44,585 nt of DNA from Macrostomum lignano (GCA_002269645.1 NIVC01000462.1:1-44585), one strand, 5' to 3'. Shown: positions 22,136-32,312, numbered from the stretch's first letter. Numbers and translations: made by a program. The notes: generated by a model from the sequence alone, not told the origin.

Positions 22136-22477
22136 GAAATATATATTGGTCATACAGTAGAACGGGAATACTTATTCAATAAAAATTTTTGTGGTCATAC
22201 GCTACGAAGTGAATGGTCATAGGCTAGAATGTAAATAAGAACGCACTATTATGAAAAAGATCATGCAGTAGCCTTTAAAAGTCAAAGCAGCAACTTTCAT
22301 CGATCATGGGAAACCTCGCGAACTTTATTTCTGCTTAAATTTTGCTCATATCGCAAGCTCTCTGAGAAGTCGTGCTCAACGCCGCCGGGCCTCTTTCAGC
22401 AACAGCCCGACTCCAGAGCCGCAAGCAGAGTCACGTGACCCCCCAGCCAGCCAGTCCCGCCCCTCTTCGGCGACAAG

Positions 22478-24915
22478 ATGCAGAAGTTCGAGAAGCTGGA
22501 GAAGATCGGCGAAGGCACCTACGGCACGGTGTTCAAGGCAAAGAATAAGGAGACGGGCGAGATCGTTGCCCTCAAGCGGGTCCGCCTGGACGAGGACGAC
22601 GAGGGCGTCCCGAGCTCGGCGCTGCGCGAGCTCTGCCTGCTCAAGGAGCTGAAGCACAAGAACGTTGTCCGCCTGCAGGACGTGCTGCACTCTGACCACA
22701 AGCTCACCATGGTGTTCGAGTTCTGCGACCAGGACCTCAAGAAGTACTTCGACTCCTGCAACGGCGAGGTCGAGGCCGACGTTGTCAAATCGTTCTTTCA
22801 TCAGCTGCTCAAGGGGCTCGAGTACTGCCACAAGAACAGCGTGTTGCACAGGTAACCCACCGCAAGCTGTACCAGGCTCCCAACATTTAAACTACGCATA
22901 AACTCTTCCAGACACCTTCCCATAAACTACCAGACACCTTACCATAAACTACCAGACACCTTCCTATAAACTACCAGACACCTTCCCATAAACTACCAGA
23001 CACCTTCGCATAAACTGCCAGACATCTTCCCATAAACTACCAGACACCTTCCCAAAAACTACCAGACACCTTCCTATAAACTGCCAGACACCTTCCCATA
23101 AACTACCAGACACCTTCGCATAAACTGCCAGACATCTTCCCATAAACTACCAGACACCTTCCCAAAAACTACCAGACACCTTCCCAAAGACTACCAGACA
23201 CCTTCCCATAAACTACCAGACACCTTCCCAAAAACTACCAGACACCTTCCCATAAACTACCAGACACCTTCCCATAAACTACCAGACACCTTCCCATAAA
23301 CTACCAGACACCTTCCCAAAGACTACCAGACACCTTCACATAAACTACCAGACACCTTTCCATAACTCTACCAGGCTCCAAACATTGCGACTACCCGACA
23401 ACCACCAACTAGAGTTTACCCCCTACGCTAACAGACATACCCATCAGTTAGATGTGCCTGCAACCTGCACAGTTCCCTGGTCAGCAGGTGTCAGCTTCAC
23501 CCTCAATTCCCGCAGGGACCTGAAGCCGCAGAACCTGCTCATCAACAAGAACGGTGAGCTCAAACTGGCCGACTTCGGGCTCGCCCGCGCCTACGGCATC
23601 CCGGTGCGCTGCTACTCAGCCGAAGTGGTCACCCTGTGGTACCGGCCGCCGGACATCTTGTTCGGGGCCAAGCTCTACTCCACTTCTGTGGACACCTGGT
23701 CGGCCGGCTGCATCTTCGCCGAGCTGTCCAACGCCGGCCGGCCGCTCTTCCCCGGCAACGACGTGGACGACCAGCTGAAGCGGATATTCAAGTGAGCCAC
23801 TCCGACCTCCTCGGTCACGGAATCGAAATCTCCTGATGAATGCGCGGCCTTCGAATTGGTCCCTGAACTGCTGCAGGAATTGCCCCTGATGAATTGTGGA
23901 AATCCCCCCTGAGGAACTGTGGAAATCGCCCCTGAGGAACTGTGGAAATCCCCCCTGAGGAATTGTTGAAATCCCCCCTGAGGAACTGTGGAAATCCCCC
24001 CCTGAGGAATTGTGGAAATCCCCCCTGAGGAATTGTGGAAATCCCCCCTGAGGAACTGTGGAAATCCCCCCTGAGGAATTGTTGAAATCCCCCCTAAGGA
24101 ATTGTGGAAATCCCCCCTGAGGAACTGTGGAAATCCCCCCTGAGGAACTGTGGAAATCCCCCCTGAGGAACTGTGGAAATCCCCCCTGAGGAACTGTGGA
24201 AATCCCCCCTGAGGAACTGTGGAAATCCCCCCTGAGGAACTGTGGAAATCCCCCCTGAGGAATTGTTGAAATCCCCCCTGAGTAATTGTGGAAATCGCCT
24301 CTAAGAAACTGGGAAACACCCCTAAGAAACTGTGGAATCGCCCATAAGCCACAAGAAATCGCCCATAAGCCACAAGGAATCGCCATAAGCCACAAGGAAT
24401 CGCCCATAAGCCACAAGGAATCGCCATAAGCCACAAGGAATCGCCCATAAGCCACAAGGAATCGCCCATAAGCCACAAGGAATAGCCCATAAGCCACAAG
24501 GAATCGCCCATAAGCCACAAGGAATCGCCCATAAGCCACAAGGAATAGCCCATAAGCCACAAGGAATCGCCCATAAGCCACAAGGAATCGCCCATAAGCC
24601 ACAAGGAATCGCCCATAAGCCACAAGGAATCGCCCATAAGCCACAAAGAATCGCCCATAAGCCACAAGGAATCGCCCCGCCACCCGCAGGCTGCTGGGCA
24701 CGCCAACCGAGGACAGCTGGCCGGGAGTCACGCAGCTGCCGGACTACAAGTCGTTCCCGCTTTACCCTGGCAGCTCCAGCCTGCAGCAGGTGGTGCCCAG
24801 GATGAGCAGCAAAGGCCGGGACCTGCTCTCCCGCCTGCTGGTCTGCAACCCGCAGTACCGCCTGCACGCGGACCAGGCGCTGCAGCACCCGTACTTCTCC
24901 GAGCCCGCCGCCTGA
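22478..24915 (+). CDS. CDK5: Cyclin-dependent kinase 5, 291 aa; exons 22478-22851, 23516-23791, 24690-24915
   Basis: [23 protein letters not shown]; CDK5-diagnostic PSSALRE helix; HRDLKPQN; [28 protein letters not shown]; [14 protein letters not shown]. Both introns are phase 2 and the total is 876 nt in frame. Confidence 0.98.
22897..23364. repeat. 22-bp minisatellite (ATAAACTACCAGACACCTTCCC), CDK5 intron 1
   Basis: About 21 tandem units. Confidence 0.95.
23890..24296. repeat. 23-bp minisatellite (GGAAATCCCCCCTGAGGAACTGT), CDK5 intron 2
   Basis: About 18 tandem units. Confidence 0.95.
24334..24677. repeat. 21-bp minisatellite (GGAATCGCCCATAAGCCACAA), CDK5 intron 2, ending just before the acceptor
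   Basis: About 16 tandem units. Confidence 0.95.
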
Positions 24916-25520
24916 GCCTCCGGTCTCTGCTCCCCCTGGCTCTGCTGGCGCGGCCCGTCCAGCTCATTATTGATGCTCCAGTCATCGCGAATTGTGCGAG
25001 TTTGCTACTGTCTGATTCAGCCTACTATGAGTAGAGTGTATAGAACAAATGTGCAATTCTGTTTTTAATTGAGAAATCGCGGTTATTGATGCGCTCTTTG
25101 TTTTCAGATCCTTTCTTTGATTTGCACGGAATTTTGCCATGCCTGTTTAGCCTGTTGATTCCTAGGCTTAGCTGCTAGTGTACTGCGCTATTGCTGCTGC
25201 AATTACCGCTTCTAGTCATTCGGTGTCGTGTGTTGTGCTACTAATTCTGGTATGTTCCACTGCCTCTGTCTGGCCTTGTCGGATCAACTCGCCAGGTCAG
25301 CTGAGGTTCTCAAAATGATTGCATAATCCGAATGCCCGATTTGCCCGGCCTGCCCTCCCCCCTCCCGCGTACTCTGTGATCCGCTCTCAGAGCTTGGCTG
25401 GTCACCGATTCGTGATGCTGCGAATTACTAAATATAAAATATATGCGATTTCCATATATGCCTACTGGGTGGCACCGCTGGCCCACACACTTATTCACCG
25501 TTCGCGTCCTTGTGTCATTC

Positions 25521-26069
25521 TATGAGCAGGTAGGAGTAGCCTATTGTCACTATGAGCAGGTAGGAGTAGCTGATTGTCACTCTATGAGCAGGTAGGAGTA
25601 GCCGATTTTCACTCTATGAGCAGGTAGGAGTAGCTGATTGTCACTCTATGAGCAGGTAGGAGTAGCCGATTGTCACTCTATGAGCAGGTAGGAGTAGCCT
25701 ATTGTCACTCCATGAGCAGGTAGGAGTAGCTGATTGTCACTCTATGAGCAGGTAGGAGTAGCCGATTGTCACTCTATGAGCAGGTAGAAGTAGCCGATTG
25801 CCACTCCATGAGCAGGTAGGAGTAGCCGATTGCCACTCTATGAGCAGGTAGGAGTAGCCGATTGCCACTCTATGAGCAGGTAGGAGTAGCCGATTGCCAC
25901 TCTATGAGCAGGTAGGAGTAGCCGATTGCCACTCTATGAGCAGGTAGGAGTAGCCGATTACCACTCTATGAGCAGGTAGGAGTAGCCGATTGCCACTCTA
26001 TGAGCAGGTAGGAGTAGCCGATTGCCACTCTATGAGCAGGTAGGAGTAGCCGATTGCCACTCTATGAGC
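25521..26069. repeat. 32-bp minisatellite (TATGAGCAGGTAGGAGTAGCCGATTGCCACTC) between CDK5 and TBL3
   Basis: Period checked (25871 to 26031 = 5 x 32). Confidence 0.95.
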
Positions 26070-26161
26070 CAGTATCAACAGCTGATTTTCACACTTTGAG
26101 CAGGCAGAGGAGCGGCCACAATACGCAGCCGGCTTTCTATTTTATGCAGCATCAGCCCGGC

Positions 26162-29100
26162 ATGACTTCAGCATCTTCGCCGCCCGACGAGGTGGAGCTC
26201 CGTCAGGTGTCCGAGCTGCGCCCGTTCCACTCGCCGGGGTCGGCGATTCACGCTGGACACGACGGGCGCCACGTCATCTGCCAGCGCAACACCTCGGACG
26301 GCTCCTCGCTGTTCGTGGTGGACACCACAGACTGCGGCATCCATCGGGAGCTCGTCGGCCAGACGGAGAAGGTCACGGCAGTCGCGGTGTCGCCGGCGGA
26401 CTCGGCCGTCTACACGGCCAACAAGGAGCTGCTGCTGCGCCGCTGGGACTGGCAGACTGGCGAGACAGGCAGCACCTGGCGCAGCTTCCACCGCAGCCCC
26501 ATCACCCTGCTGGCCGTCAGCGAGGACGGTCGACGGCTGGCCAGTGGCAGCTCGGACGGCGCCGTGCGGCTGTGGGATCGGGGAAACGGCGACACCCGGC
26601 CCTGCAGGGGGCACTCCGGCCTGCTCAGCCTCCTGCGCCTCGCTGCGGGCCAACTGTTCTCAGCTGACGGGCATGACTATCGGGTGCGCGTTTGGTCCGC
26701 CACCTCTGCCGAGCTGAGTGGAGCGCTGGAAGGCCACCAGAGCGCCGTCACCGGCCTGTGCCTGATGGACGAGGGCTGGGCCGTCACCAGCGGCAGGGAT
26801 CAGGTGAGGCCGGTTTTGGTGTCCGGGATCGGATTTCAGGATGTCAGGGATCAGGTGTTAGGGTGTCAGGGATCAGGTGTTAGGGTGTCAGGGATCAGGT
26901 GTTAGGGTGTCAGGGATCAAGTGTCAGGGTGTCAGGGATCAGGTGTTAGGATGTCAGGGATCAGGTGTTAGGGTGTCAGGGATCAGGTGTTAGGGTGTCA
27001 GGGATCAGGTGTTAGGATGTCAGGGATCAGGTGTTAGGGTGTCAGGGATCAGGTGTTAGGGTGTCAGGGATCAGGTGTTAGGGTGTCAGGGATCAGGTGT
27101 TAGGGTGTCAGGGATCAGGTGTCAGGGTATCAGGGATCAGGTGTTAGGGTGTCAGGGATCAGGTGTCAGGGTGTCAGGGATCAGGTGTTAGGGTGTCAGG
27201 GATCAGGTGTTAGGGTGTCAGGGATCAGGTGTTAGGGTGTCAGGGATCAGTTTTAGGGTGTCAGGGATCAGTTTTAGGGTGTCAGGGATAGGATTCTACA
27301 CCTATTAGATAAGAGTAGTATGCTAAATTTAAGTCCAAGGTCGCTATTTCTCGCATTTTAGGTGCTAATTGTCTGGCAGCTGAGCAATTATTCTCGCCTA
27401 GCAACGGTACCCACCGACGAGAGTCTGGAGTGCTGCATCCGCGCCCCGGCAGGCCTGGCGGAGTCGCTGGGACTCGGAGCCGTCGCCGGCGGGCTGGTGC
27501 TGACTGGCGGCCAGTCCGGCCGGCTCAAGTTCTGGGACCTCAGCAGCAGCCGGCGCCGCTGCCTGCTGGAGCTCAGCCGCGGCGACGGCGGCCAGAGCGG
27601 CGGCGGCGGAGGCGGCGGGGAGAGCGCGGAGTACTCCCCGGCAGCGTGCAGTGCGCCCTAACGCTGGGCGACGGCCTGCTGGTCGCCAGGCAGGCGGGCT
27701 CCGTCGAGCTGTACAGTGGCAGCGGCCGCCTCGAGGCCGAGTGGTGCGGCGCCCTCGGCGAGGTCACCTGCGTGCTGGCGGGCCCGCCAATTGGCGATGC
27801 CTCGGCTACCCGGCTGCTGCTGGCCACGGACTCCGGCCCCTTCCTTCGCGTCTTCCTGTGGCGGCCGGGCGACTCCGCTGATTGGCGCTGCCGTTCCCTG
27901 CAGCTGCACGGCGAGCTGGACTCGCTGATCTGCTGCTCGCTGCTGCCCGGCAACCGCCTTCTCACCGCTGCCAAGGGCGGCCGGGTCCGCCTTCACCGCC
28001 TCGAGGTCGCCGGCCAGAGCCTCGCCGGCGTGCGCGCCGTCCACATTGGCGACCTGGAGCCCGGCCACGAGGGTCACGTGACCGCCCTGGCCGCTACTGC
28101 CGACGGCAATATGGCCGCCTCCGCCTGCGAGACGCCCGTTATCAAAGCCTTCCGCGTCACCGACTCCGGGCCGACCGTGGTTGCCATGGTGACCAGGCCG
28201 CACGAGAAGGCCGTCAACTGCCTGGCGGTGTCGCCTAACGACACCCTGCTGGCCGCAGGCAGCCGGGACAAGTCCGTGTCGCTCTGGTCGCTGCCCAAGC
28301 TGCGTCCCATCGGGCGGCTCTCCGGCCACAAGCGGGGCGTCTGGAGCGTCAAATTCAGCCGGCACCAGCAGCTGCTGGCCAGCGTCTCCGCCGACTGCTG
28401 TGCCAGAGTTTGGGACTTGCGCGACCTCAGCTGCCACCGCTGCCTGCAGGGTGACCACCCGCTGTACGACCTCGACTGGCTGGGCTCACAGCACCTTGTC
28501 ACAGTGGATCAGGTGCGAGTTTGGGTGCAGCTTGTCGCCAAGCCTGCCTGTGTTTGAATATTCGCCCTGCCACCCGCCTGCATCCGCCTCCGTCCCTGCC
28601 ACCTCCGCTCCTTTCACCACCTCTGCATCCACCTCCGCCCCTGTCACCACCTCTGCATCCACCTCCGCCCCTGTCACCTCTGCATCCGCCTCCGCCCCTG
28701 TCACCTCCTCTGCATCCGCCTCCGCCCCTGTCACCTCCTCTGCATCCGCCTCCGCCCCTGTCACCACCTCTGCATCCACCTCCGCCCCTGTCACCACCTC
28801 TGCATCCACCTCCGCCCCTGTCACCACCTCTGCATCCGCCTCCGCCCCTGTCACCACCTCTGCATCCACCTCCGCCCCTGTCACCTCCTCTGCATCCGCC
28901 TCCGCCCCTGTCACCACCTCTGCATCCACCTCCGCCCCTGTCACCACCTCTGCATCCACCTCCGCCCCTGTCACCACCTCTGCATCCGCCTCCGCCCCTG
29001 TCACCACCTCTGCATCCACCTCCGCCCCTGTCACCTCCTCTGCATCCGCCTCCGCCCCTGTCACCACCTCTGCATCCACCTCCGCCCCTGTCACCACCTC

Positions 29101-29863
29101 TGCATCCACCTCCGCCCCTGTCACCACCTCTGCATCCGCCTCCGCCCGTCACCTCCGCCCCTGTCACCTCGGCCACTCCCACCCCGCCCCGCAGTCCGGC
29201 CTTGTTCGCGTCTGGTCGGTGCGGGACCGCGCCCCGGTGGCCACCCGGGAGGGCCACAACGGCCGCGCCTGGTGCATCGCCTCGCTAGGAGACGCCGCCC
29301 CGGCCGCTGACGCCACCGACGAAGGCACCAGCGGCTCTGGCGGTCACTGGCTCACCGGCGGCGAGGACGGCCGGCTGCTGCTTTGGCGAGATGCCACCGC
29401 CGAGGCCGTTGCCGAGCGCGCTGAAGCCCGCGCTGACGCTTTGGCGCGCGAGCAGCGCCTTCAGAATCTGCTTGGTTCCGGCCGCCTCGCCGAGGCCCTC
29501 GCCCTGGCGCTGAGCCTTGCCCAGCCATCGCGGGCGCGCGGCATCGTGGCCGACTTGGTGGCGGCCTCCGGCTGCGGCCGCCTGGACCCGGAGCTCGTGC
29601 GCGGCCTGGACGAGCCGCTGCAGCAGCGCCTGCTGGAGTTCAGCGCCGGCTGGAATTCGAACTCGCGCACCTGCCACGAGGCGCAGTGCGCCCTGCACGC
29701 CCTCCTGCTAGTGCGGACGCCGCAGCAGCTGCTGGCCTGGCCCTCCGTGCGGCGCCACCTGCCCGCCCTCCTCGCTTTCACCGAGCGGCACGAAAGGCGG
29801 GCGCAGCAGCTGGCAGCGTGTCGGCACCTGATCCGCCTGCTGGCTGCTGACCCCGCTGCCTGA
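26162..29863 (+). CDS. TBL3: Transducin beta-like protein 3 / UTP13 (WD40 repeats + Utp13 C-terminal domain; SSU processome). Exons 26162-26803, 27362-28512, 29195-29863; one apparent 1-nt deletion at 27636-27639
   Basis: WD40 repeats; HEKAVNCLAVSPNDTLLAAGSRDKSVSLW; LSGHKRGVWSVKFS; Utp13-type C-terminus (REQRLQN..ALALALSLAQP, LLEFSAGWNSNSRTCHEAQ, LLAFTERHERR). Both introns are phase 0. The start could alternatively be 26144. Confidence 0.92.
26840..27289. repeat. 22-bp minisatellite (GGATCAGGTGTTAGGGTGTCAG), TBL3 intron 1
   Basis: AGGTGTT at 26941, 26963 and 26985. Confidence 0.95.
28575..29167. repeat. 30-bp C-rich minisatellite (CTCTGCATCCACCTCCGCCCCTGTCACCAC), TBL3 intron 2
   Basis: About 19 units; stop-free in several frames, giving false mucin-like ORFs. 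Confidence 0.95.
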
Positions 29864-29919
29864 GAATGCCACTACCTGTGCCTGCTTGCTTTTATCATGA
29901 GTTGCGACCCTGCGAATGA

Positions 29920-29925
29920 AATAAA
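29920..29925 (+). promoter_or_regulatory. Probable polyadenylation signal of TBL3 (AATAAA)
   Basis: AATAAA 57 nt after the TBL3 stop, followed by T-rich sequence. Confidence 0.5.
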
Positions 29926-30056
29926 CTGCATTTTTGACCCGATTTGAATTCATTCGGGCGCGAATTCTGGTCCAATTTTGGCCAAGTCTTTTGTTTGTTC
30001 TGCAGATAGCTTAGGGCTCTTAGTCTGGCTCAGGCCTCCGCTGTTCCGGATCCTAC

Positions 30057-30630
30057 CGGGATCTCAGCAGTATCTCACATCATCCTGTAGGATACCTGTC
30101 CCACTCACCTGGGATCTCAGCAGTATCTCATCTTCATCCTGTAGGATACCTGTCCCACTCACCTGGGATCTCAGCAGTATCTCACATCTTCATCCTGTAG
30201 GATACCTGTCCCACTCACCTGGGATCTCAGCAGTATCTCACATCTTTATCATGTAGGATACCTGTCCCACCCACCTGGGATCTCAGCAGTATCTCACAGC
30301 TTCATTCTGTAGGATACCTGTCCCACCCACTTGGGATCTCAGCAGTATCTCACAGCTTCATCATGTAGGATACCTGTCCCACCCACCTGGGATCTCAGCA
30401 GTATCTCACAGCTTCATTCTGTAGGATACCTGTCCCACCCACCTGGGATCTCAGCAGTATCTCACAGCTTCATTCTGTAGGATACCTATCCCACTTACCT
30501 GGGATCTTAGCAGTATCTCACATCTTCATCCTGTGGGATACCTATCCCACTTACCTGGGATCTCAGCAGTATCTCACAGCTTCATCCTGTAGGATACCTG
30601 TCTCACTCACCTGGGATCTCAGCAGTATCT
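30057..30630. repeat. 53-56 bp minisatellite (CCTGTAGGATACCTGTCCCACTCACCTGGGATCTCAGCAGTATCTCACATCTTCAT) between TBL3 and MED27
   Basis: About 10 units. Confidence 0.94.
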
Positions 30631-30711
30631 TGAATCCCATGTAGCACATTCTTAGTCCCAAGCATTAGCATCAGAACCCCACTGTGTGGCAATCTGTGCG
30701 CCATCCCGCAG

Positions 30712-32312
30712 GAGAGCCTGAGCCACCTGTCCATCCAGAGCCTGCTGCACGTGCGCGAGCTTCGCGGCGAGCTGCTGCAGCTGCACCAGCCGGCCAGCGA
30801 CGGTTCCGGGTCGTCCGGCTTCGAGCAGCTGGCCGCCACCGCCCGCAAGCTGGCCGAGAGCGTGCAGAGCCTGGACCAGCTGGCCGAGAAGATGGCGCTG
30901 GTTGCCAGGCAGCAGTACCAGCAGGCGGTCCCGCCCGACCAGCTCAGTTTGTACCCCAACATCCTGCTGGCTGACGCCGACCCGGAGCGGCACGCCGCCA
31001 CAACCCAGGCGTTGTTCGGCGAACGCTGGCGCGCCGACGTCTGCGGCCTGGTGCGCGACGGCCTGGCCACCCGCGCCCTCCTGCACGCCCGCGCCCGCGC
31101 CCCGGCCGCCGCCGCTGCCACCGCCTCCGCCGCCGCCTCCCGGTCGGGTGGAGGGCGCCAGAGTGAATTGGCCACGCAGTCGCAGCAGATGCGGAACTTC
31201 CTGGAGCGGGAGCTGAGCCGCAGCTACCGGACCCAGTGCGAACGGCACCACCGCGACTCGGACCGCCAGCTCAGCGTCTCCGTAGAGCCCGCGTCGCCCT
31301 GCACCAATCTGGCCGTCGTCACCACCGACTGCTTCCACGTGCTGCTGTTCACAAGGGGCCTGGTTATTGAGATGGCTCAGGTGAGGCTTTGATCCCCTGT
31401 TGAGTTTTCCCATCCATCCCGCTCCCCCTGGCTCAGGTGAGGCTTTGATCCCCTGTTGAGTTTTCCCATTCATCCCGCTCCCCCTGGCTCAGGTGAGGCT
31501 TTGATCCCCTGTTGAGTTTTCCCATTCATCCCGCTCCCCCTGGCTCAGGTGAGGCTTTGATCCCCTGTTGAGTTTTCCCATCCATCCCGCTCCCCCTGGC
31601 TCAGGTGAGGCTTTGATCCCCTGTTGAGTTTTCCCATCCATCCCGCTCCCCCTGGCTCAGGTGAGGCTTTGATCCCCTGTTGAGTTTTCCCATTCATCCC
31701 GCTCCCCCTCTGGCTCAGGTGAGGCTTTGATCCCCTGTTGAGTTTTCCCATCCATCCCGCTCCCCCTGGCTCAGGTGAGGCTTTGATCCCCTGTTGAGTT
31801 TTCCCATTCATCCCGCTCCCCCTGGCTCAGGTGAGGCTTTGATCCCCTGTTGAGTTTTCCCATTCATCCCGCTCCCCCTGGCTCAGGTGAGACTTTGATC
31901 CCCTCTTGAGTTTTCCCATCCATCCCCCCCCCTGGCTCCGTATTCGTGCTCAGCTGTATACCTGCAATATACATGTGCATTTCGGGTTCTCCCCTGCCCG
32001 CAGGTGCTGGGCCTCGGCGAGCCGCTGCCCCGGCCCAACCAGGCCTGGCCGAGCTCCCATTTTCGCTGTTTCCGCCAGCTGACGGCCGGCCTGCTGCAGC
32101 TGCTGGTGGCCGGCAGGCAGAGCGGCGGCGGCACCAGCCTGCTGCAGCTGCTCATCAAGTGGCTCTGCGCCTTTCGCAACCTCTTCATGCAGCGCTGCGC
32201 CCGCTGCGACCGCATCCTGCGGGACCAGCTGCCGCCCACCTGGTTCGATTTTCGCAAGGACGACCGGCCAGTCTATCACCTGGCCTGCAAGAGTGCCGTG
32301 TGCGCCGCCTGA
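30712..32312 (+). CDS. MED27: Mediator of RNA polymerase II transcription subunit 27; exons 30712-31380 and 32004-32312; no genomic start codon found upstream
   Basis: The C-terminus WLCAFRNLFMQRCARCDRILRDQLPPTWFDFR..YHLAC matches the MED27 zinc-binding tail (LF..PC.RCG..L.D.LPPTW.DFR). Phase-0 intron; 325 codons from the acceptor at 30711. Confidence 0.9.
31373..31937. repeat. 56-bp minisatellite containing the MED27 5' splice site (GGCTCAG|GTGAGG), 10 copies
   Basis: Donor-like GT at 31381, 31437, 31493, 31549, 31605, 31661, 31719, 31775, 31831 and 31887. Confidence 0.96.

What the first reader, a model, noticed from the sequence alone, without database searches (positions are those of the whole stretch)
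29864..30760. MED27 lacks a genomic start codon; a spliced-leader AUG would supply it exactly in frame
Seen: the MED27 frame opens directly after a good acceptor (CCATCCCGCAG at 30701-30711) in phase 0 with GAG AGC CTG AGC CAC CTG. The ~850 bp back to the TBL3 stop hold a poly(A) signal and a minisatellite, and I found no ATG followed by a usable phase-0 GT donor there. The first in-frame ATG (30892) would remove ~60 residues that look like the MED27 N-terminal helix. Established: flatworm spliced-leader RNAs end in AUG, which can act as the initiator Met (described in schistosomes). Inference: SL trans-splicing at 30712 yields M-ESLSHLSIQSLLHVRELR, a ~326-aa protein close to the usual MED27 length. 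An essential Mediator subunit would then depend on trans-splicing for its first codon. The other strong acceptor at 30005 would give only ATG-ATA-GCT-TAG.
Basis: partly seen in the sequence, partly recalled or inferred. Interest (0 to 1): 0.75.

Follow-up and report, generated by a model that had tools for sequence, protein, structure and literature searches.

The report
Spliced leader supplies MED27 start codon
In the flatworm Macrostomum lignano the MED27 gene has no start codon of its own and almost certainly takes the AUG at the end of the trans-spliced leader RNA; this mechanism has been known in flatworms since 2006, so it is a clean example rather than a discovery.

Summary
The window is GenBank NIVC01000462.1:1-44585 (Macrostomum lignano, Mlig_3_7). 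MED27 is two exons, 30712-31380 and 32004-32312, giving 325 codons. The frame opens at the first base after a CAG acceptor. No in-frame ATG occurs before 30892, and no usable ATG exon lies in the 848 bp back to the TBL3 stop.

The 60 codons before 30892 are clearly coding: GC3 is 0.97 and they score about 1.2 bits per codon. They carry the conserved MED27 N-terminal helix. A profile of 23 orthologues is collinear with Met plus 325 residues.

The M. lignano spliced leader (SL) is 35 nt and ends in ATG. GenBank annotates this CDS as "partial", starting exactly at 30712. TBL3 is annotated the same way at its own acceptor. CDK5, TBL3 and MED27 share the transcriptional-unit name Mlig032149. All this fits a polycistronic precursor cut at SL sites.

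The mechanism is established (Cheng et al. 2006, Schistosoma) and has been remarked on in Macrostomum. This is a new member of a known kind, of low to moderate interest.

The parts
22478..24915 (+). CDK5-like kinase gene, 3 exons, own ATG. It is the first gene of the likely polycistronic unit.
   Evidence: A unique canonical splice solution gives 291 aa, identical to PAA82561.1. The copy at a third locus is named Mlig032149g2.
26141..26149 (+). Acceptor ttttatgcag upstream of TBL3, a likely SL trans-splice site.
   Evidence: The GenBank TBL3 CDS in the duplicate locus (PAA84468.1, partial, 824 aa) begins HQPGM, at the first base after this AG. An SL ATG would be in frame, 4 codons before TBL3's own ATG at 26162.
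26150..29863 (+). TBL3/Utp13 gene, 3 exons, stop TGA at 29861-29863.
   Evidence: Pfam Utp13 and WD40 hits. Exon model. The window copy lacks one C at about 27635 compared with the duplicate locus.
29920..29925 (+). AATAAA poly(A) signal of TBL3.
   Evidence: Read directly from the sequence.
29988..30014 (+). Strong alternative acceptor cttttgtttgttctgcag|ATAGCTTAG. It matches the YTNCAG trans-splice motif, but SL-ATG here gives only M-I-A-stop.
   Evidence: Sequence. Motif from PMC8629364.
30058..30630 (+). 56-bp minisatellite (10.3 copies) inside the intergenic region (outron).
   Evidence: TRF. Such arrays are common throughout the window.
30690..30711 (+). Pyrimidine-rich tract and acceptor ...gcgccatcccgcag. 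This is the inferred SL trans-splice acceptor.
   Evidence: It is the only AG in phase 0 apart from the adjacent 30713-14. The same CCCGCAG|G sequence serves as cis acceptor in MED27 intron 1 and in both CDK5 introns. The GenBank CDS starts at 30712.
30712..31380 (+). MED27 exon 1, 223 codons, no initiator ATG. Encodes the N-terminal helical hairpin.
   Evidence: GC3 0.97-0.88. Codon log-odds. Predicted helices at residues 2-30 and 36-70. Donor CAG|GTGAGG.
30892..30894 (+). First in-frame genomic ATG (Met61), in a good Kozak context GAGAAGATGG. A possible secondary start.
   Evidence: It lies in the middle of predicted helix 2.
31381..32003 (+). MED27 intron 1. It is filled by a 56-bp minisatellite (31373-31938) that repeats the exon end plus the donor about 10 times.
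32004..32312 (+). MED27 exon 2, with the Med27 domain and C-x2-C...H-x2-C motif. Stop TGA at 32310-32312.
   Evidence: Pfam PF11571, E 2.3e-13. Invariant C288, C291, H315 and C318.

Best explanation
MED27 is a downstream gene of a polycistronic transcription unit, CDK5-like -> TBL3 -> MED27, all on the + strand.

The precursor RNA is cleaved and polyadenylated after the TBL3 AATAAA at 29920. The 35-nt spliced leader of M. lignano, which ends in AUG, is trans-spliced to the CAG acceptor at 30709-30711. The 5' end of the mature mRNA is therefore ...UUAUUGCAUG|GAGAGCCUG. The leader's AUG is the only in-frame AUG ahead of the conserved N-terminal helix, and it starts a 326-residue MED27 (M-ESLSHLSIQSLL...).

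**Shown here:**
- There is no genomic start codon.
- Codons 1-60 are coding and homologous to MED27.
- The acceptor is in phase 0.
- The SL ends in ATG (literature).
- The public CDS starts exactly at the acceptor.
- TBL3 and MED27 share a transcriptional-unit name.

**Inferred:**
- The SL is actually joined at 30712.
- Ribosomes actually initiate on the SL AUG.
For: **Organism and leader**
- Organism and record identity.
- SL sequence ending in ATG, 30% of genes trans-spliced, 45% of conserved genes trans-spliced, operon spacing under 1 kb after removing repeats: PMC8629364.
- The TBL3 stop to the acceptor is 848 bp, or 275 bp without the minisatellite.

**No alternative start**
- No usable ATG exon upstream.
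- No ATG in the open frame 30634-30711.

**Codons 1-60 are real MED27**
- GC3 0.97 and +1.2 bits per codon.
- They align with the L..AL...LR..V...F..L.DG helix of MED27 orthologues. Several orthologues start M-E-L or M-E-N-L opposite E1.
- The profile HMM aligns state 9 to residue 8.
- AlphaFold predicts helix 2-30. Foldseek aligns 322-329 columns to human MED27 chains, E 3e-10.

**Public annotation**
- GenBank CDS PAA82563.1/PAA84467.1 is 'partial' and begins at 30712.
- The annotation pipeline cuts transcripts at SL-read peaks (PMC5730564).
- The TBL3 CDS also begins at the first base after a CAG. The CDK5 CDS of the duplicate locus does not begin after an AG.
- Shared prefix Mlig032149 for g2 (CDK5), g3/g5/g7 (TBL3) and g4/g6 (MED27).

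**Mechanism known in flatworms:**
Against: - I saw no SL-containing read or cDNA. The evidence for the junction is indirect, resting on annotation coordinates and gene names.
- The acceptor CCGCAG has C rather than T at -5, so it does not match the top trans-splice motif [T/C]TNCAG. That motif is present at 44% of sites.
- A better match with a longer pyrimidine tract lies at 30005, only 80 nt after the poly(A) signal.
- The SL AUG has U at -3 (weak context), whereas Met61 has A at -3 and G at +4.
- The third genomic copy is annotated from an internal Met (166 aa).
Confidence: 0.85

Rival explanations
1. Translation starts at the first genomic in-frame AUG (30892, Met61), giving a 266-residue MED27. 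On this reading, the open frame upstream of it is 5'UTR.
For: It has a good Kozak context, GAGAAGATGG, and no other ATG occurs in any frame between 30640 and 30892.
Against: The 60 codons upstream have GC3 0.97 and the highest coding score in the gene. They carry the conserved N-terminal MED27 motif. Met61 lies in the middle of predicted helix 36-70. This could still be a minor product made by leaky scanning.
Confidence: 0.05
2. A cis-spliced upstream exon with its own ATG exists but is not recognisable. It might be lost in a collapsed repeat, lie inside or upstream of TBL3, or use a non-canonical donor.
For: The intergenic region holds a 573-bp minisatellite that could be mis-assembled. ATG 29866 is followed by a phase-0 GT at 29878.
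Against: That donor, CCT|GTGCCT, is poor and sits in the TBL3 3'UTR ahead of the poly(A) signal. The two independently assembled duplicate loci are identical over the 900 bp upstream. The transcript-based GenBank CDS starts at 30712 and is flagged partial. Orthologue N-termini need no further residues.
Confidence: 0.04
3. Non-AUG initiation, for example at CUG 30694 or 30682, on an mRNA that is not trans-spliced.
For: The frame is open from 30634. The last six codons before 30712 score positive, so composition alone cannot fix the boundary to better than about 6 codons.
Against: Codons 30634-30693 score strongly negative. These CUGs are in poor context. The positive scores are explained by the C-rich acceptor tract. 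The annotated transcript starts at 30712.
Confidence: 0.03
4. This copy is a decaying duplicate that lost its first exon, and another locus makes functional MED27.
For: M. lignano DV1 carries duplicated chromosomes. The neighbouring TBL3 copy in the window has a 1-nt deletion relative to the duplicate.
Against: The MED27 ORF is intact, with very strong codon bias. Both fully annotated copies have the same 325-aa product and identical upstream sequence. No copy with an ATG exon was found among the M. lignano proteins on record.
Confidence: 0.03

Closest known systems
[quoted passage not shown]
   Same: A flatworm SL ending in AUG is joined in frame to an ORF that has no AUG of its own. In S. 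mansoni the SL AUG is in frame in 28% of trans-spliced transcripts, and more than 40 cDNAs need it.
   Different: The species is a free-living macrostomorph and the SL sequence differs. Here the junction and the translation are inferred, not demonstrated.
SL-resolved operons of M. lignano (Ustyantsev & Berezikov 2021, PMC8629364; Wudarski et al. 2017, PMC5730564)
   Same: Neighbouring genes on one strand, a repeat-adjusted spacer under 1 kb, repeats inside the spacer, a conserved housekeeping gene downstream, and one transcriptional-unit name for the genes.
   Different: The raw spacer (848 bp) is long compared with the roughly 100-bp mode. The acceptor is not the commonest YTNCAG form.
slORFs: ORFs created by SL addition in nematodes, Oikopleura and trypanosomes (slORFfinder, PMC9851317)
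   Same: The start codon is supplied by the leader rather than by the gene.
   Different: Those cases mostly use non-AUG NUG codons inside the SL and often give alternative ORFs. Here a true AUG at the SL 3' end starts the canonical, conserved protein.

Membership tests
Flatworm mRNAs initiated on the SL 3'-terminal AUG | The organism has an SL RNA whose leader ends in AUG immediately before the GU donor. | tested here: met
   M. lignano SL is CGGTCTCTTACTGCGAAGACTCAATTTATTGCATG, followed by GTAAG (PMC8629364). The final ATG is conserved in M. cliftonense and M. hystrix (PMC10468722).
Flatworm mRNAs initiated on the SL 3'-terminal AUG | The SL is physically joined to the mRNA at the acceptor (SL-containing reads or cDNA). 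| not testable with these tools
   The evidence is indirect only. The GenBank CDS is 5'-partial and starts at the first base after the CAG. The pipeline sets such ends from SL reads. TBL3 shows the same pattern.
Flatworm mRNAs initiated on the SL 3'-terminal AUG | The SL AUG is in frame with the main ORF, with no stop between them. | tested here: met
   The acceptor at 30711|30712 is in phase 0, and ATG|GAG AGC CTG... stays open to 32309.
Flatworm mRNAs initiated on the SL 3'-terminal AUG | There is no genomic in-frame AUG at or upstream of the conserved N-terminus, so the SL AUG is required. | tested here: met
   No ATG in 30634-30891 in frame. No usable ATG exon upstream. N-terminal homology reaches residue 1-8.
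Flatworm mRNAs initiated on the SL 3'-terminal AUG | Translation actually begins at the SL AUG. | not testable with these tools
   This needs proteomics, ribosome profiling or a reporter.
Mediator subunit 27 (Pfam PF11571 Med27) | A match to the Med27 domain above the gathering score. | tested here: met
   50.7 bits against a cut-off of 25, E 2.3e-13, residues 237-319. Human MED27 chains match at E 8e-9.
Mediator subunit 27 (Pfam PF11571 Med27) | The C-terminal C-x2-C ... H-x2-C zinc motif and the LPPTW motif. | tested here: met
   C288, C291, H315, C318 and P300 are invariant in 24 sequences.
Mediator subunit 27 (Pfam PF11571 Med27) | The overall fold: an N-terminal helical hairpin plus a C-terminal alpha/beta domain. 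| tested here: met
   AlphaFold model with mean pLDDT 71. The top five Foldseek hits are human MED27 chains; the top four align over 322-329 columns, E 3e-10 to 2.5e-7, and the fifth over 161 columns, E 1.2e-6. N-terminal pLDDT is only 56-73.
M. lignano SL-resolved operon (criteria of PMC8629364) | Adjacent genes on the same strand, less than 1 kb apart after subtracting repeats. | tested here: met
   TBL3 to MED27 is 848 bp, or 275 bp without the minisatellite. CDK5 to TBL3 is 1234 bp, or 642 bp without it.
M. lignano SL-resolved operon (criteria of PMC8629364) | The genes lie on one precursor transcript. | tested here: inconclusive
   The locus tags share the prefix Mlig032149 (g2 CDK5, g3/g5/g7 TBL3, g4/g6 MED27). 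That prefix denotes a transcriptional unit or a 95% cluster of such units. I did not see the precursor reads themselves.

The most novel reading that the evidence does not exclude
MED27 has irreversibly lost its own initiator. Its expression is therefore locked to trans-splicing, an evolutionary ratchet. Because the SL AUG sits in a weak context (U at -3) and Met61 in a strong one, leaky scanning might also produce a second MED27 isoform without the N-terminal helical hairpin. The ratio of the two would then be set by SL usage. More broadly, many of the CDSs flagged 'partial' in the Mlig_3_7 GenBank record may be complete proteins whose Met comes from the SL. That would define a sizeable class of conserved genes dependent on the SL AUG.
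Probability: 0.15. Interest if true: 0.45.

Novelty: new member of a known kind. Interest (0 to 1): 0.2.

Why it matters
This is a clear, checkable case in a transgenic model flatworm of an essential, conserved transcription factor subunit whose first codon is not in its gene.

In practice it explains why GenBank marks this CDS, and TBL3's, as 'partial'. Annotation pipelines that trim the whole leader, ATG included, will systematically produce Met-less proteins.

Anyone building a MED27 reporter or rescue construct in M. lignano must either keep the outron and acceptor or add an ATG. It does not change what is known about trans-splicing.

Tried and rejected
**Transcript-derived proteins**
- A search with the N-terminal 126 residues found nothing.
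- Exact look-ups of P0001, P0002 and two genomic ORFs found no contigs.
I did not try it by any other route.
- The third homology search, with the TBL3 C-terminus, returned nothing, probably because low-complexity candidates swamped it.

**Literature supplements**
- Supplements of three M. lignano papers hold no MED27 entry.
- The Wasik et al. 2015 paper is not held.

**Comparison with the duplicate locus**
- The 900 bp upstream are identical, so the comparison gives no information.

**Explanations considered and rejected**
- A cis ATG exon.
- A start at Met61.
- A CUG start.
- SL addition at 30005, which gives only M-I-A-stop.
- SL addition at 30674, which is out of frame.
- The old UniProt model A0A1I8FAL8 (P0002). 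It fuses the TBL3 C-terminus to MED27 through 30675-30711 and looks like a prediction artefact of a start-less gene.

**Other**
- No SL RNA gene lies in the window.

Full report
**What is in the sequence**

The TBL3/Utp13 reading frame ends with TGA at 29861-29863, and Pfam finds Utp13 at E 6.6e-25. An AATAAA follows at 29920-29925. A 56-bp minisatellite of 10.3 copies fills 30058-30630.

At 30701-30711 lies CCATCCCGCAG. The MED27 frame then opens with GAG AGC CTG AGC CAC CTG. Exon 1 runs to the donor CAG|GTGAGG at 31380. Exon 2 runs from 32004, after ctgcccgcag, to the stop at 32310-32312. The product is 325 residues without a Met. Pfam Med27 matches residues 237-319 at E 2.3e-13.

**Is a start codon really missing?**

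Between the TBL3 stop and 30711 there are six ATGs. Four are followed by a stop within two codons. Only ATG 29866 has a phase-0 GT after it, at 29878, with the sequence CCT|GTGCCT. That is a poor donor, 3 nt past the TBL3 stop and ahead of the TBL3 poly(A) signal.

The MED27 frame is open upstream only to a TGA at 30631 and contains no ATG there. The only ATGs in any frame between 30600 and 30950 are 30639 (ATG TAG, out of frame) and 30892 (in frame, Met61).

Of the AG dinucleotides in 30600-30730, only 30710-11 and the adjacent 30713-14 are in phase 0.

**Are the 60 codons before Met61 coding?**

Yes, on four lines of evidence.

- **Composition.** GC at codon positions 1/2/3 is 0.80/0.33/0.97 for 30712-30801 and 0.70/0.50/0.97 for 30802-30891. 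It is 0.28/0.61/0.41 for 30622-30674.
- **Codon usage.** I trained a codon table on 2,243 codons of other genes in the window. With it these 60 codons score +1.2 to +1.3 bits per codon, higher than the rest of the gene. The 26 in-frame codons upstream score -0.5. The cumulative score turns upward somewhere in 30694-30712, so composition alone fixes the boundary to within about six codons.
- **Homology.** An exhaustive search found 43 MED27 orthologues. In an alignment of 23 full-length orthologues, ESLSHL-SIQSL-LHVRELRGELL-QLHQPA-SDG lines up with the family's N-terminal helix, consensus L..AL....LR..V...F..L.DG. Several orthologues begin M-E-L or M-E-N-L directly opposite E1. A profile built from the 23 orthologues alone aligns state 9 to residue 8, so Met plus 325 residues is collinear with the family's N-terminus. 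The N-terminal 60 residues add only about 5-6 bits.
- **Structure.** AlphaFold predicts helices at residues 2-30 and 36-70, with pLDDT 56-73 there, and Met61 lies inside the second helix. Foldseek's top hits are human MED27 chains from Mediator structures (7emf, 7lbm, 7ena), aligned over 322-329 columns at E 3e-10.

**Organism and its spliced leader**

The MED27 product is 100% identical to M. lignano entries. The locus returned for the annotated protein is identical to window 20712-42312. The window is therefore NIVC01000462.1:1-44585 of assembly GCA_002269645.1, Mlig_3_7.

M. lignano has one 35-nt SL, CGGTCTCTTACTGCGAAGACTCAATTTATTGCATG, followed by GTAAG in the SL RNA gene. According to PMC8629364:

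- 30% of all genes and 45% of human-conserved genes are trans-spliced;
- 15% of genes lie in operons;
- operon spacers peak near 100 bp once repeats are subtracted, with 1 kb used as the threshold.

Here the spacer is 848 bp, or 275 bp without the minisatellite.

**Evidence from the public annotation**

The 90% cluster of the MED27 fragment contains NCBI PAA82563.1/PAA84467.1, 'BOX15_Mlig032149g6, partial'. It is 325 aa, begins ESLSHL, and is identical to my model. Its CDS range is 30712-32312.

The Mlig_3_7 annotation was built from RNA-seq transcriptional units. A pipeline called TBONE cut these units at peaks of trimmed SL-containing reads and at poly(A) sites (PMC5730564). Because the frame stays open for 26 codons upstream, a 5'-partial CDS that starts at 30712 implies that the transcript model starts there, at the acceptor.

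TBL3 shows the same pattern. In the duplicate locus NIVC01000373.1, its CDS (PAA84468.1, 'Mlig032149g5, partial', 824 aa) begins HQPGM..., at the first base after tttatgcag|. This is 12 nt before TBL3's own ATG at window 26162.

By contrast, the CDK5 CDS of that duplicate locus starts at a position not preceded by AG. The kinase may therefore be the promoter-proximal, non-trans-spliced first gene.

At a third locus, CDK5, TBL3 and MED27 are PAA88350.1-88352.1, with locus tags Mlig032149g2, g3 and g4. They share one transcriptional-unit prefix.

**Mechanism**

The best reading is a polycistronic CDK5-TBL3-MED27 precursor. TBL3 is polyadenylated after 29920. The SL is trans-spliced at 30711|30712, and its terminal AUG starts MED27.

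The acceptor CCCGCAG|G is the same sequence used as cis acceptor in MED27 intron 1 and in both CDK5 introns. It differs at -5 from the commonest trans-splice motif YTNCAG, which is found at 44% of sites.

The stronger-looking acceptor at 30005 would give only M-I-A-stop, so it cannot produce MED27. I could not determine whether it is used at all.

**Rivals**

- **Start at Met61.** Contradicted by the coding and homology signals upstream of it, although leaky scanning from the weak-context SL AUG could yield a minor short isoform.
- **A hidden cis exon.** Made unlikely by two identically assembled loci, the transcript-based partial CDS, and the collinear orthologue N-termini.
- **A CUG start at 30694 or 30682.** Not excluded by composition, but it has no positive support.
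- **Pseudogene status.** Contradicted by the intact, strongly biased ORF.

**Comparison with what is known**

Use of the flatworm SL 3'-AUG as initiator Met was shown in Schistosoma mansoni in 2006. [quoted passage not shown] The AUG is conserved in nearly all parasitic flatworm SLs. It is described as providing the start codon in Hymenolepis. It is noted as a likely translation start in Macrostomum SLs.

No paper I could read names MED27 or gives a count for M. lignano. The finding is therefore a new member of a known kind. Its main practical value is for annotation and construct design.

**Limits**

I could not access reads, cDNAs or the genome browser's SL track. The junction itself and initiation at the SL AUG are inferred.

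Noticed in passing
window 31373-31938: The minisatellite in MED27 intron 1 begins 8 nt inside exon 1, so TGGCTCAG|GTGAGG, the exon end plus donor, is repeated about 10 times head to tail. Any donor other than the first would add 56n nt and run into an in-frame TGA. The duplicate locus L002 has 338 bp (about 6 units) fewer.
   Followed up: partly
window 26141-26164: An SL joined at TBL3's acceptor tttatgcag|CATCAGCCCGGCATG would place the SL AUG in frame 4 codons before TBL3's own ATG. A genomic ATG inside the acceptor (26144) is also in frame. GenBank calls this CDS 'partial', starting at HQPGM.
   Followed up: yes
window ~27635: The window's TBL3 copy lacks one C relative to the duplicate locus NIVC01000373.1, which shifts the frame in exon 2. 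This matches GenBank giving only a 356-aa product here (PAA82562.1) against 824 aa in the other two copies. It is either a real frameshift in a redundant copy or a long-read homopolymer error.
   Followed up: partly
window 22412-22477 vs L002 1909-1974: The CDK5 5' leader has CCCCCC in the window and CCCCC in the duplicate. The upstream frame is therefore closed by a TGA here but open in L002, where GenBank annotates a 313-aa 'partial' CDS.
   Followed up: partly
window 25513-26104: The CDK5-TBL3 spacer holds a 32-bp minisatellite of 18.6 copies. Each unit carries ATGAGCAG|GTAGGAGT, an ATG plus a donor-like site. These are out of frame with TBL3's acceptor, so they do not offer a cis start.
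   Followed up: partly
whole window: All eight recognisable genes are on the + strand: a C2H2 zinc-finger gene at 0.2-7.6 kb, an HhH+EEP nuclease-like gene at 16.8-18.8 kb, CDK5, TBL3, MED27, and two tandem MFS/SLC22-like transporters at 33.9-37.8 and 40.9-43.2 kb. More than 25 minisatellite arrays fill introns and spacers. An AT-rich block (30-43% GC) lies at 8-16 kb.
   Followed up: no
UniProt A0A1I8FAL8 (P0002): An older gene model fuses the TBL3 C-terminus to MED27 by splicing into 30675 and reading 30675-30711 in frame (…QQLAATPLCGNLCAIPQESLSHL…). It looks like a predictor's way round the missing start codon.
   Followed up: yes
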